Origin: Neoechinorhynchus agilis
Lineage: Eukaryota > Animalia > Acanthocephala
Assembly: GCA_051530055.1 (NCBI GenBank)
Contig: CM121341.1
Span: 12,254,784-12,318,783, forward strand
DNA length: 64,000 bases
Direction: 5' to 3'
How positions within the stretch are numbered: position 1 is the first letter of the stretch; each line of letters starts with the position of its first letter. Position numbers and translations under genes: made by a program. The notes under the pieces are model-generated. The model saw only the letters and a program-made list of their open reading frames with translations. It was not told the origin of the DNA and did not search any database. Below are positions 965 to 5,618 of this stretch, one piece after another.

Positions 965-1856
965 ACTTCACAACCAATGAAAGGATGCTCTTTCATGAAA
1001 TAGATACTAGGGATTTTGATCGATTTGTTATTAACAATATTCAGCTTATAAATAAAATTATAGGTCACGTAAAAATTTATCATTGTTCAGTAACTTTATT
1101 TCTCATCGGATTAAGTTTGAAGTTCAGAATTATTAGGAAGAATTTAAGGTGTTGATTAATTTGCTAAATTTCAAAAATGTAGGGCCCAACCTTTATAAAA
1201 ATCTAGTACAACCTTTCAAAAATGCTAACTGTTAGATCTTTGATTGTCGTCATTTATAATTTGGAAAGGTATAGAAGATTTTCCGTCGGCTATTACGCTT
1301 ATTTAAAGTCGCTTAAACCGTTTTGAGCAGCATGCGTAATAATTTGCACGGAATTCGAAACTTTCGTCTTAGTAACTTTTAATACTTCTTGCAATATGGT
1401 TGGCTCCCTGAATTAGCACGATCTAACCTTTATAAAACAGATTACCGTTTGGCATTGCTCGGGAAGCTTAATCGAGGATGATCACTATTCAAAAACTAAG
1501 ACATGATCAAAAGTTATGCAAATTAAAAACATACGAACTTTAGCTATACTTTGACCAATTCAAAAGTCGCCTCGTTATTATTATGCTCCGTAGGCATTAA
1601 GATCAACGGAAACTTCTTTGCGGTTTTCGATTTCATTTGATTAAATGTCAGAGACAAAATCAATTTATGACCTAGAAAGTTTACAAAAACTTTCCAAAAA
1701 TCTACATGCAGACTTTATTTTATTTTTAACACTCCCTGCCGGTCAAAATTTTAACGATCTTTTATCCGTCTTAAACTTTTCGCTCAATCCGATTCGAGTG
1801 CGGAATTAACACTTTAATAACCTAAAAAAGTTCGACGAAAAGGATCAAATATTGAG
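965..1856. repeat. ~890 bp dispersed direct repeat, copy 1
   Basis: Aligns by eye with 4762-5618 at high identity with small indels; no coding signal. Confidence 0.9.
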
Positions 1857-1888
1857 TGCAATGAAACTAAAAAACTGACTATAATTCG

Positions 1889-2236
1889 CGAATCAGAAGA
1901 CGACAATTCATCATCTCCTTAAATCGGATGTCACTGTCTTTTGTTCATCATTTTCGCAGTTAAGAAATATTTTAAAGAAATTGCACAAATTCTGTGTTGC
2001 AAAGCAATTAAAAAACTGATTACAATAATTAACGAATCAGAAGAAGACAAATCATCACCTCGTTAAATCGGACGTCCCTATATTTTGTTCATCATTTTCG
2101 CTCTTAAGAAACATATTAAAGAAATTGAATAAATTCTGTGTTGCGAAGAAACTGAAAAGCTGACCACAATAATTTTCGAATCAGAAGACAAATCATCATC
2201 TCTAAATCGGATGCCCCTTTTTTTTCATTATTTCCG
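1889..2236 (-). ncRNA. Tandem cluster of three box C/D snoRNA-like units (144 bp period; 1889-1956, 2033-2100, 2177-2236)
   Basis: Minus strand reads cgaaa-ATGATGA-guide-CCGA-spacer-RTGATGA-..-CTGA-ttcg, i.e. C, D', C', D boxes with a 4-bp terminal stem. Unit 3 has a degenerate C box (ATAATGA). Confidence 0.5.
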
Positions 2237-2296
2237 TACTTAAGAAATATTTTAAAGAAATCAAAAATCTGACTACAATAATTTTAGAATCAGAAG

Positions 2297-2635
2297 GCCT
2301 CCAGCACGAATGTTTTTCGCTTCTGGCGCTTGCGGCAGAAACTTTTCCAGGGGAAGAAGTCTTCTTGGATCGATAGATAGCTGTTTTTCCTTGTTGAATG
2401 AATTCGCCTACATACTATCCATCATTGTTACTGAAAAATAGTATTCTTTGATTGGTCCGAAAATCTCATCGACTTTTCCGATTTATTCTTTATTTTCCAA
2501 GTTGATTTGAGCATTGAAATAGGGGACGTGTGACTTCATCTCTGATCTGAGAACGAGTTGTCCCTCGCAAGGGTGTAGAAATTCACCGGCATGTTGGACG
2601 CTTTGAGGTGTTCCCAGGTCAAAATCGCGCCCGCC
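2297..2635 (-). pseudogene. GAR1: GAR1 (H/ACA snoRNP subunit) pseudogene, intronless, two nonsense codons, no GAR tails
   Basis: Translates GEFLHPCEGQLVLRSEMKSHVPYFNAQINLENKE*IGKVDEIFGPIKEYYFSVTMMDSM*ANSFNKEKQLSIDPRRLLPLEKFLP. Stops at 2483-2485 (TAA) and 2408-2410 (TAG). Confidence 0.9.
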
Positions 2636-4201
2636 TTTTTAAGATTACGCCTCTGTGGTTCTAGCTGCTGTTGTGCTTATTTTGTTAGTTCGCAATTTTC
2701 CGAAATTGTAGTTTGTTAACAGAATGTCTCGTGTTGACTACGAGAAATAATGTCAGCCGCATTATTGCTTCTTTGTTTAATGGGCCTGAATATACTTGTA
2801 TCGAATTCGTTGCCGCCATCTCTTCGGTATGGCATTGCTTATTTGAGTGTTTGTTTATCGTTGCGCATTTCAATGTTTTCTGAACTTTTCGAAATTAATT
2901 TATCGCCTTGTCGTAATTTTATTCTACGCGTGAGGAACCCAATTTTTCCTTGAAAAGATTGTCGTTTACGTCGTTTTGAAGCATTATAAAGGTGTTCTAG
3001 TAAACATGTTTGCTTATTAGTTTTCGAGTTGTTGAGCAAACTTTGAACGCCCGTGTACTATTTTGGTGCTATGTTTACCATTAATAGTCTCCGTTTGTGC
3101 ACCCGTTAAAGTCTACTTGGTTCGAGCGTCACTCCGTTTTCGAACCAAAGAACCATCTTCATCACTCATCCTTGAAACGAAATGTACACGGCCTTTGAAC
3201 TTGCCTGGATCTACAACGATTTCCAATACGAAATCACTTGGTTGACTCAGGTGTATCAGTACCACTATGCGCTCTATGGAGATCGGTATACCGACTATTT
3301 TAAAAAGTACCACTGGGTTCAATACTGGAACCACATAGCTTTGTGGGCCATGAGCAGAGGCATAACCGAGTAGCTGCCTCTGCTAATGAAGGTCGGCTAA
3401 AATCGCAAACTGACCCCTATGTCATAGTCATTGCGATATTTTCAATAAAGTGTTATCTTTATTGCTTGATCGAATTCTTGTGTTACGCAAACTATAGAAT
3501 CCAGGACATTCGCTTTTCACTAATTTTAATATAATCTTTTTAGCGCAAGTTTTTTTGTGATTCTTATATCTAACTTTTTGTTCGATGAGCGTTCTCATCT
3601 ATACCAATCGATGTGTCCATTTTGTACATTTGCACACCAAATTACGTTCGTCGCAGGGATTTGCTGTGATTTTAAGCTGTTCGATGTGAAAATGACTATC
3701 AAGAATATTTATTGCTACCAATAATCCAATATAGAAGCCAATCGCGAGCAATATAATTGGGCCGATAATTTTGTGATTGCATGCAATGCGTTCCCTTAAA
3801 AAAACTAGTACCATTCAGCAGATAGAATTTTCGGAATCTTATGGAGGCTGATATTTAAGAACATTGACATGTGAGATAAATGAAAGTAATGTTTAATTTG
3901 AACATTTTATTTTGCGTTCACGAAATATAAAAACGTCCTAGCTAAAAATTGTAATGTCCTTGCGGTTCACCGTTCTCTTTTTCAATGCTCATAGTTGAGC
4001 GATTAATCAATAATTGTTCACGCCTCGCACGAATGATCATCGAGTCGATTTCCTAGGAACGTCGTATTGGGTGTAGCATTTCTATTTATTGAATACCACT
4101 GCCCTTTTACTGTCGATATCCACAGAATCTCCAACAATGCAAATATTTTGGATTTTGAGACTTCAATAACGACGTTTCGGACGATGAAATTCCTATGCGC
4201 G

Positions 4202-4761: not shown

Positions 4762-5618
4762 ACTTCATAACCAATGAAAGGATGCTCTTTCATGAAATAG
4801 ATACTAGCGATTTTGATCGATTTGTTATTAACAATATTCAGTTTATAAATAAAATGTAACTTTATTTCTCATCGGATTAAGTTTGAAATTCAGAATTATT
4901 ACTAAGAATTTAAGGTGTTGATTAATTTGCTAAATTTCAAAAATGTAGGGCCCAACCTTTATAAAAATCTAGTACAACCTTTCAAAAATGCTAATTGTTA
5001 GATCTTTGATTGTCGTCGGTTATCTTTTGGAAAGGTATAGAAGATTTTCCGTCGGCTATTACGCTTATTTAAAGTCGCTTAAACCGTTTTGAGCAGAATG
5101 CGTAATACTTTGCACGGACTTCGAAACTTTCGTCTTAGTAACTTTTAATACTTCTTGCAATATGGTTGGCTCCCTTAATTAACACGATCTAACCTTTATA
5201 AAACAGATTACCGTTTGGCATTGCTCGGGGAAGCTTAATCGAGGATGATCAGTATTCAAAAACTGAGACATGATCAAAAGTTATGCAAATTAAAAACATA
5301 CGAACTTTGACCAATTCAAAAGTCGCCTCGTTATTATTATTATTATGTTCCGTAGGCATTAAGATCAACGGAAACTTCTTTGCGGTTTTCGATTTCATTT
5401 GATTAAATGTCAGAGACAAAATCAATTTATGACCTAGAAAGTTTACAAAAACTTTCCAAAAATCTACATGCAGACTTTATTTTATTTTTAACACTCCCTG
5501 CCGGTCAAAATTTAAACGATCTTTTTGCCGTCTTAAACTTTTCGCTCAATCCTATTCGAGTGCGGAGTTAACAATTTAATAACCTAAAAAAGTTCGACGG
5601 AACGGATCAAATATTGAG
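4762..5618. repeat. ~890 bp dispersed direct repeat, copy 2
   Basis: Matches 965-1856. Confidence 0.9.

What the first reader, a model, noticed from the sequence alone, without database searches (positions are those of the whole stretch)
1860..2296. A 144-bp 'satellite' that reads as a polycistronic box C/D snoRNA cluster with an 18S rRNA guide
Seen: each minus-strand unit has canonical geometry (cgaa stem, C box ATGATGA, D' CCGA, C' RTGATGA, D CTGA, ttcg stem; 60-68 nt). The D' guides are acaaaagacagtgacat and acaaaatatagggacgt. Established: the conserved 18S segment 5'-ACGUCCCUGCCCUUUGU-3' has the complement ACAAAGGGCAGGGACGT. Each guide matches it at 13/17; their consensus matches 15/17, with the 9 nt next to D' perfect. 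Inference: the +5 rule predicts 2'-O-methylation of the first C of ACGU-C-CCUG, which I do not recognise as a known yeast or human site. The copies are diverging, so they may be decaying or retargeting paralogues.
Basis: partly seen in the sequence, partly recalled or inferred. Interest (0 to 1): 0.75.

Follow-up and report, generated by a model that had tools for sequence, protein, structure and literature searches.

The report
Decayed copy of rRNA-guide gene array
The 144-bp repeat is a worn-out duplicate of a tandem array of genes for a well-known small nucleolar RNA that guides methylation of the large (28S) ribosomal RNA, not of 18S; the working array, about 40 copies, sits elsewhere on the chromosome directly behind the GAR1 gene.

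Summary
The repeat is real: 2.9 tandem copies of 144 bp. Two of the three full minus-strand units have complete box C/D geometry, which occurred in none of 50 shuffled windows.

The 18S reading fails. This worm's own 18S reads AAGUCCCUG, not ACGUCCCUG. The window guides match it at 13/17 and 12/17 with scattered mismatches, which is no better than shuffled guides.

The family has about 80 units in the Neoechinorhynchus agilis genome.
- **Master array:** it lies at C1:19.085-19.091 Mb and has 40 units, 29 fully intact.
- **Guide:** the master guide pairs without a gap over 11 nt with 28S UGUCCCUGUCU (0 of 200 shuffles do this).
- **Family match:** the units match Rfam RF00357 (snoR44/J54) at E 1.6e-6, and the guide is identical to that consensus. 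This is the snoR44/U74(SNORD74)/snR64 family, which guides the conserved LSU site Cm2327/Cm3820/Cm2337.

The master array starts a few bases after the stop codon of the only intact GAR1 gene. All eight GAR1 copies in the genome are followed by such an array.

The window holds a GAR1 pseudogene (two stop codons, C-terminus lost) plus three units with mutated guides or boxes, so it is a decaying duplicate.

The RNA itself is ordinary. The layout is unusual for an animal. The scan has already noted other tandem snoRNA arrays elsewhere in this genome (s1-037793, s1-263362).

The parts
1857..2296 (-). Short tandem array: three full 144-bp units plus one partial unit, a decayed duplicate of the master snoRNA array
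   Evidence: TRF; unit alignment; coordinates
1887..1958 (-). Unit C: 72-nt box C/D layout. Stem 1952-1958/1887-1892, C box 1945-1951, guide 1928-1944, D' 1924-1927, C' 1908-1914, D 1893-1896. All boxes are intact. The guide has a G-to-U change at the position next to the methylation position, which breaks the 28S duplex
   Evidence: RF00357 33.6 bits, genome-wide E 0.003; guide scan
2031..2102 (-). Unit B: 72-nt box C/D layout with intact boxes (C' GUGAUGA) and a 4-bp stem. The guide is changed at several positions; its best pairing to 28S is 9 pairs, 2 of them G-U
2175..2237 (-). Unit A: degenerate unit with a broken C box (ATAATGA), a guide reduced to an A-run plus GGGGCAU, and a shortened D-side region
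2269..2296 (-). Partial unit (D box, 3' stem, start of spacer) fused to the truncated end of the GAR1 pseudogene
2276..2638 (-). GAR1 pseudogene core (Pfam Gar1). It has in-frame TAA at 2483-2485 and TAG at 2408-2410, where the intact copy has CAA and AAG. The C-terminal RGG domain is replaced by the array
   Evidence: comparison with the intact gene
3116..3169 (-). Stretch identical to the first 18 residues of the annotated N. agilis GAR1 protein (upstream exon). It shows that the whole gene, not a retrocopy, was duplicated

Best explanation
Window 1857-2296 is the remnant of a duplicated 'GAR1 gene + snoRNA array' locus of Neoechinorhynchus agilis. The unit encodes a 72-nt box C/D snoRNA of the snoR44/U74(SNORD74)/snR64 family. 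In its working form this RNA pairs through the 11 nt upstream of its D' box (AGACAGGGACA) with 28S rRNA UGUCCCUGUCU. By the 5-nt rule it would direct fibrillarin to 2'-O-methylate the first C of CCC, the site known as Cm2337 in yeast, Cm3820 in human and Cm2327 in Arabidopsis. Working-looking copies exist only in one array of 40 units at C1:19,085,4xx-19,090,9xx, which begins a few bases after the stop codon of the only intact GAR1 gene, on the same strand. From that layout I infer that the array is transcribed as the downstream extension of GAR1 or as one long precursor, and trimmed to single snoRNAs. The window copy arose by segmental duplication of that locus and was then duplicated again 30 kb away. 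It is decaying: GAR1 has two stop codons and has lost its C-terminus, and all three snoRNA units have lost the guide or a box. Shown: the repeat, the boxes, the family match, the guide-28S pairing, the GAR1 linkage and the decay. Inferred: transcription, processing, and the methylation itself.
For: Repeat and boxes. About 80 units genome-wide in arrays. Rfam RF00357 matches at 45.8 bits, E 1.6e-6, with guide AGACAGGGACAUC identical to the family consensus; all genome-wide hits fall in this family. Own 28S reads GAGAUUCCUACUGUCCCUGUCUGC in 27 exact copies. The master guide forms 11 uninterrupted Watson-Crick pairs there; the best-site score is reached by 5 of 200 shuffles and an 11-nt exact word by 0 of 200. 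Published equivalence: AtsnoR44 (RF00357, CL00069) guides Cm2327, which equals U74 Cm3820 and snR64 (PMC3511168; PMC8817022). Register check: the two guides of the RF00357 consensus predict sites 11 nt apart on this 28S, as published for Am2316 and Cm2327. One master unit has a canonical CUGA in the same register as CCGA. Census: 29 of 40 master units are fully intact and 25 keep the guide. No unit outside the master array keeps the guide; the only other intact-box units are one in L017 and two each in the window locus and its paralogue, all with mutated guides. All 32 'C box + guide' occurrences lie in the master array. The intact GAR1 ORF is immediately followed by the array and is identical to the NCBI N. 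agilis protein. All 8 GAR1 copies have an array downstream and only the master is open. In the other arrays, boxes, stems and guide diverge as much as the spacers. The window locus is 98.2% identical to its paralogue and 91-96% identical to the master flanks.
Against: No RNA data could be reached, so expression of any copy, the ends of the RNA and the methylation are unshown. The Rfam score is just under the curated cut-off (45.8 against 48). Concerted evolution within an array can keep copies alike without selection, so the intactness of the master array is suggestive rather than proof. Units B and C of the window still have perfect boxes and stems and could still yield stable RNAs. The GAR1 linkage was not found at the Pomphorhynchus laevis GAR1 locus, so it may be young or incidental.
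Confidence: 0.8

Rival explanations
1. One reading: the window units are working snoRNAs whose D' guides direct methylation of a new site in 18S rRNA (the first C of GU-C-CCUG near the 3' end).
For: Unit C matches the own 18S site at 13/17 and unit B at 12/17. The boxes and stems of both units are intact.
Against: The mismatches are scattered, including at positions 2, 6, 10 and 12 from D' for unit C, and the longest run is 5 pairs for unit C and 6 for unit B. Guide function needs an uninterrupted duplex around position 5. Shuffled guides do as well in about 10-50% of trials. With the anchored duplex score the 18S site is not among the top three sites for either guide. The ancestral, well-kept guide points to 28S, and 18S and 28S simply share GUCCCUG.
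Confidence: 0.03
2. The window units (B and C) are still expressed and are orphan or retargeting snoRNA paralogues with a non-rRNA or regulatory target.
For: Boxes C, C', D and the terminal stem are intact in B and C. Unit C folds with a closed terminal stem. The same two units are kept identical in the paralogue 30 kb away.
Against: Identity with the paralogue is explained by the recent duplication (98.2% over 2.7 kb, spacers included). The adjacent GAR1 is dead. Unit A is already broken. In the non-master arrays as a group, boxes decay as fast as spacers. No significant target was found in rRNA.
Confidence: 0.1
3. The whole family, master array included, is only a satellite that happened to capture a snoRNA gene. 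None of it is used, and the working gene lies in unassembled sequence or has been lost.
For: The arrays show satellite behaviour: higher-order 284-bp repeats, propagation of broken units and multiple decayed arrays. Eleven of 40 master units are defective.
Against: No other locus matches RF00357 or SNORD74 or carries the guide next to a C or D box. The target site is one of the methylations conserved since the last eukaryotic common ancestor (PMC3511168). Within the master array, the boxes and stem vary less than the loop and spacers.
Confidence: 0.07

Closest known systems
snoR44/J54/Z268 (Rfam RF00357), human U74/SNORD74 (RF00284), yeast snR64 (RF00509); Rfam clan CL00069
   Same: Box C/D layout. 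The guide sits in the 5' half, upstream of D', and the antisense core AGACAGGGACA is identical to the RF00357 consensus. It targets the same LSU cytidine (Cm2327 in Arabidopsis, Cm3820 in human, Cm2337 in yeast).
   Different: The plant RNA has a second guide (for Am2316, the U79 site). Here the D-side region UUUGUCUUCUU has no significant rRNA target, so the RNA is single-guide like U74 and snR64. At 72 nt it is shorter than the 97-position plant model, and it scores just under the curated cut-off. Human SNORD74 is an intronic, single-copy gene (from memory: in GAS5). Here there are about 40 tandem copies behind GAR1.
Polycistronic or tandem snoRNA gene clusters of plants, yeast (snR72-78), trypanosomatids and Euglena
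   Same: Head-to-tail snoRNA genes with short spacers and no obvious promoter for each unit. Processing from a long precursor is the expected route.
   Different: Those clusters mostly hold different snoRNAs. Here a single snoRNA is repeated about 40 times with satellite-like higher-order structure, in an animal, and fused to the 3' end of a protein-coding gene.
SNORD115/SNORD116 arrays of mammals
   Same: An animal genome with tens of tandem copies of one box C/D snoRNA.
   Different: The mammalian units are about 2 kb, each snoRNA lies in an intron of a long non-coding host, and they are orphan guides. Here the units are 142-144 bp, show no intron signals, and carry a classic rRNA guide.
Human SNORD82 (RF00158), guide for 18S Am1678 next to the GUCCCUG heptamer
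   Same: Weak Rfam similarity (25 bits, E 0.1) through the shared CAGGGAC core.
   Different: The score is far below its cut-off of 43, and the pairing to the own 18S is interrupted. It is not a member.

Membership tests
Box C/D snoRNA (general) | C box RUGAUGA near the 5' end and D box CUGA near the 3' end | tested here: met
   Units B and C of the window and 29 of 40 master units meet it. Window unit A fails (ATAATGA).
Box C/D snoRNA (general) | Terminal stem of 4-6 bp bringing C and D together | tested here: met
   Master UGCGAA/UUCGCA, 6 bp; window unit C 5 bp; unit B 4 bp
Box C/D snoRNA (general) | Internal D' and C' boxes | tested here: met
   C' is UGAUGA. D' is CCGA (3 of 4), and one master unit has CUGA in the same register
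Box C/D snoRNA (general) | Uninterrupted antisense element of about 10 nt or more ending next to D or D', with the target nucleotide opposite position 5 | tested here: not met
   For the window units, no guide beats shuffled guides (108-195 of 200 shuffles reach the observed score). The master array meets it (11 nt).
Box C/D snoRNA (general) | Stable RNA of defined ends bound by fibrillarin, Nop56, Nop58 and 15.5K | not testable with these tools
   No small-RNA or immunoprecipitation data could be reached. The look-up for transcripts of the linked GAR1 returned nothing
snoR44 / SNORD74 / snR64 (Rfam CL00069) | Covariance-model score at or above the curated cut-off | tested here: inconclusive
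   RF00357: best master unit 45.8 bits against a cut-off of 48, E 1.6e-6; window unit C 33.6 bits, genome-wide E 0.003. RF00284 (SNORD74) gave no match, but its control search rang nowhere either
snoR44 / SNORD74 / snR64 (Rfam CL00069) | Guide complementary to the LSU site equivalent to Cm2327/Cm3820/Cm2337 | tested here: met
   Met for the master array: 11 pairs with own 28S UGUCCCUGUCU, and the predicted C lies 11 nt after the A predicted from the family's second guide, as published. The window units have lost it: 10 of 11, 7 of 11 or fewer core matches
   Own 18S is AAGUCCCUGCCCUUUGU. Pairing is 13/17 and 12/17 with 4-5 scattered mismatches, which is not above shuffles

The most novel reading that the evidence does not exclude
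In this acanthocephalan, the functional genes for rRNA-guide snoRNAs are satellite-like tandem arrays, an organisation known from kinetoplastids, euglenids and plants rather than animals. This particular C/D snoRNA array would be expressed as the 3' extension of the mRNA gene for GAR1, a core protein of the other (H/ACA) snoRNP class, so that the two modification systems share one transcription unit. The locus would spread by segmental duplication, leaving decaying 'gene + array' copies such as the one in this window.
Probability: 0.3. Interest if true: 0.55.

Novelty: new member of a known kind. Interest (0 to 1): 0.33.

Why it matters
The RNA and its target are textbook items. The predicted new 18S methylation site does not exist as proposed, so that claim should be dropped. 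Two things remain of interest. First, an animal seems to keep a conserved snoRNA as a roughly 40-copy tandem array instead of a single intronic gene, and other arrays noted in this genome suggest this is a general habit of the species. Second, the array is physically fused to the 3' end of GAR1 and the pair is duplicated as a block. This gives a ready-made series of live and dead copies for studying how snoRNA genes are born, amplified and lost. It also warns annotators that 'satellites' in this genome can be essential RNA genes.

Tried and rejected
1. Variant genetic code. The Gar1-like frame in the window has an in-frame TAA and TAG, and from memory both seemed to align with Q in yeast Gar1. 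I rejected this because the intact copy has CAA and AAG at these places, so they are ordinary nonsense mutations in a pseudogene.
2. My first recall of the target as the snR76/SNORD88 site (C2197/C3680) was wrong. Spacing checks failed, and the literature table assigns RF00357 to the U74/snR64 site.
3. D-side guide. UUUGUCUUCUU has only an 8-nt match (AAGAAGAC) to 28S, about 70 nt downstream of the main target. This is not better than shuffles (128 of 200), so a role as accessory pairing is only a guess.
4. Spacer hairpin as a processing signal. It is strong (z about -5) in every second spacer of the master array only, weak in the alternate spacer type and in the other arrays. Inconclusive.
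5. Conservation in a second acanthocephalan. There is no such snoRNA within 10 kb of Pomphorhynchus laevis GAR1 by pattern search. This is a weak test, and no eukaryotic genome collection was available for a proper one.
6. RNA evidence. The look-up of the GAR1 protein in public assemblies found nothing.
7. The bacterial-type promoter and terminator scan is not meaningful for a eukaryote.
8. One Rfam call on four loci failed internally.
9. The genome paper (PMC12690905) mentions no snoRNAs, satellites or GAR1.

Full report
**Observation**

Tandem Repeats Finder reports a 144-bp period at window 1857-2261 (2.9 copies, 81% matches). Read on the minus strand, there are three full units.
- Unit C (1887-1958) and unit B (2031-2102) have a complete box C/D layout: a 4-5 bp terminal stem, C box AUGAUGA, a 17-nt region, D' CCGA, a short loop, C' UGAUGA, an 11-nt region, D CUGA and the closing stem.
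- Unit A (2175-2237) has a broken C box (AUAAUGA) and a degenerate guide.
- A partial fourth unit (2269-2296) is fused to a protein-coding remnant.

The full box pattern occurs twice in the window and in none of 50 shuffled windows. The geometry is therefore real and not chance.

**The 18S claim**

I located the rRNA genes of this genome. The species' own 18S reads AAGUCCCUGCCCUUUGU.
- Unit C is complementary to it at 13 of 17 positions and unit B at 12 of 17. The mismatches are scattered, and the longest run is 5 pairs for unit C and 6 for unit B.
- Shuffled versions of unit C's guide reach 13/17 or more somewhere in the 5.8 kb of rRNA in 19 of 200 trials. Shuffled versions of unit B's guide reach its 12/17 in 95 of 200.
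- I also used a duplex score anchored on the D' box that requires a pair at position 5. With it, neither guide beats its shuffles (108 and 148 of 200), and the 18S site is not among the three best sites for either.

**What the family is**

The unit is not private to the window.
- A search of the whole 46-Mb genome finds about 80 units in several arrays. The largest is at C1:19,085,4xx-19,090,9xx and has 40 units.
- Scanning that array against Rfam gives RF00357 (snoR44/J54/Z268) at up to 45.8 bits (cut-off 48, E 1.6e-6). The guide AGACAGGGACAUC is identical to the family consensus.
- Genome-wide, every RF00357 match falls in this repeat family. Window unit C scores 33.6 bits.

Hoeppner and Poole (PMC3511168) list AtsnoR44 (RF00357, clan CL00069) as the guide for LSU Cm2327. 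They equate it with human U74 (RF00284, Cm3820) and yeast snR64 (RF00509). The Dictyostelium RiboMethSeq paper gives the same equivalence, Cm2337/snR64 with Cm3820/U74 (PMC8817022).

**The real target**

The assembled 28S genes are interrupted by R2-type retrotransposons at the classic site, so I read the 3' part of 28S from C1:2297 onward.
- It contains GAGAUUCCUACUGUCCCUGUCUGC, present in 27 exact copies in the genome.
- The master guide pairs with UGUCCCUGUCU over 11 uninterrupted Watson-Crick pairs. This is the best site in all rRNA (5 of 200 shuffles reach the score), and no shuffle gives an 11-nt exact word (0 of 200).
- With D' = CCGA, the fifth nucleotide upstream pairs with the first C of CCC.

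As a register check, the second guide of the plant consensus predicts the A of GAG[A]UUCC. On this 28S that A lies exactly 11 nt before the predicted C, matching the published Am2316/Cm2327 spacing. One master unit even has a canonical CUGA in the same register.

18S and 28S share the heptamer GUCCCUG. That is why a decayed 28S guide looked like an 18S guide.

**Genomic setting**

Upstream of the window array, on the same strand, lies a Gar1-like frame (Pfam PF04410). It has an in-frame TAA and TAG, and its C-terminal RGG domain is replaced by the array.

Searching the genome with a piece of this frame shows eight GAR1 copies, each directly followed by an array of this family. Only one copy is open (221-aa frame), and that is the one in front of the master array.
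- There the intronless core ORF (L015:342-914) has both RGG domains. It equals the NCBI protein of Neoechinorhynchus agilis, which also confirms the organism.
- The first, decayed unit starts about 10 nt after the stop codon.
- The intact gene has CAA and AAG where the window has TAA and TAG. So the window copy is a pseudogene, not evidence for a variant genetic code.
- The window also keeps the annotated upstream exon (3116-3169), so the copy arose by DNA duplication.
- The window locus is 98.2% identical over 2.7 kb to a paralogue 30 kb upstream. Its flanks are 91-96% identical to the master locus, and its array about 80%.

**Live and dead copies**

| Test | Master array | Other arrays |
|---|---|---|
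| Units with all boxes and stem intact | 29 of 40 | one in L017; two each in the window locus and its paralogue |
| Units that also keep the 11-nt guide | 25 | none |

- All 32 places in the genome where a C box is followed by the intact guide lie in the master array.
- No stand-alone gene with this guide next to a D box exists in the assembly.
- Relative to the master consensus, the non-master arrays diverge as much in the C box (17%), guide (28%) and 3' stem (33%) as in the spacers (21-31%).
- Within the master array, the boxes and 3' stem vary less (about 4%) than the loop and spacers (10-12%).

Concerted evolution confounds the last comparison. The overall picture is still one maintained locus and several decaying duplicates.

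**Mechanism**

Shown: the sequence features above.

Inferred from established box C/D biology:
- The master units give 72-nt RNAs that assemble with 15.5K, Nop56, Nop58 and fibrillarin.
- These RNAs methylate the 28S cytidine.

Inferred from layout only:
- The array is transcribed from the GAR1 promoter as a 3' extension, or as a long precursor, and trimmed to single snoRNAs.

Every second spacer of the master array folds into a strong hairpin (z about -5). The alternate spacers and the other arrays do not, so a processing signal remains open. A conserved A/T-rich element (AAAUAUUUCUUAAC) ends one to two bases upstream of each unit's terminal stem and a T-run follows it, so independent transcription of each unit is not excluded. 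No RNA data could be reached.

**Comparison with what is known, and verdict**

- The RNA is an ordinary member of an ancient snoRNA family. It is single-guide, like U74 and snR64. The D-side region has no significant rRNA target.
- The layout is the unusual part for an animal: about 40 tandem copies of one snoRNA fused to the 3' end of GAR1, copied as a block. It resembles protist and plant clusters more than the intronic genes typical of animals.
- At the GAR1 locus of Pomphorhynchus laevis I found no such snoRNA, but that was a weak test.
- Earlier notes of this scan describe two other large tandem snoRNA arrays in the same genome (s1-037793, s1-263362). I did not test them, but they suggest the habit is general.
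- The genome paper does not mention any of this (PMC12690905).

The 18S target and the 'new methylation site' are wrong. The window element itself is a decaying duplicate of low intrinsic interest. The master locus is moderately interesting.

Noticed in passing
G000:C1:1-3430 (L028); also C2:1-9999 (L025), C2:250000-259999 (L024), C1:19295800-19305799 (L022): Every assembled 28S gene I examined (four rDNA units plus the copy at the start of C1) is cut at the classic R2 site. The 5' part of 28S ends near ...GUAACUAUGAC, and the 3' part resumes at GCCAAAUGCCUCGUCAUC directly after a reverse-transcriptase ORF. The rDNA units are scattered near the ends of C1 and C2 and on small contigs. No uninterrupted 28S was seen.
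   Followed up: partly
L015:900-6450 (G000:C1:19085400-19090950): The master array has a higher-order structure. Two unit types (142 and 144 bp) alternate; they differ in the D'-C' loop and in the spacer. Only one spacer type forms a strong hairpin (UAGGCAG...CUGCCUA, z about -5). Three units have an 11-nt deletion that removes the guide.
   Followed up: partly
G000:C2:8992580-8994472, C2:8796221-8798200, C38:16391-17389, C2:8859824-8860537, C1:12173826-12173945, C1:12226633-12227436: Further 'GAR1 pseudogene + decayed snoRNA array' copies. Some arrays propagate units with broken C boxes (AUUAUGA, AUUAUUA, AAAUUUA) or broken D boxes as higher-order repeats.
   Followed up: partly
window 1676-1700 and 5438-5462: The same 11-bp tandem motif (AAACTTTACAA, 2.3 copies) occurs twice, 3.76 kb apart. 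This suggests a local duplication or two copies of a mobile element flanking the pseudogene locus.
   Followed up: no
L015:1 to about 340 against window about 2640-3720: The region upstream of the GAR1 coding sequence is better conserved between the master and window copies (96.5%) than the coding sequence itself (91.5%).
   Followed up: no
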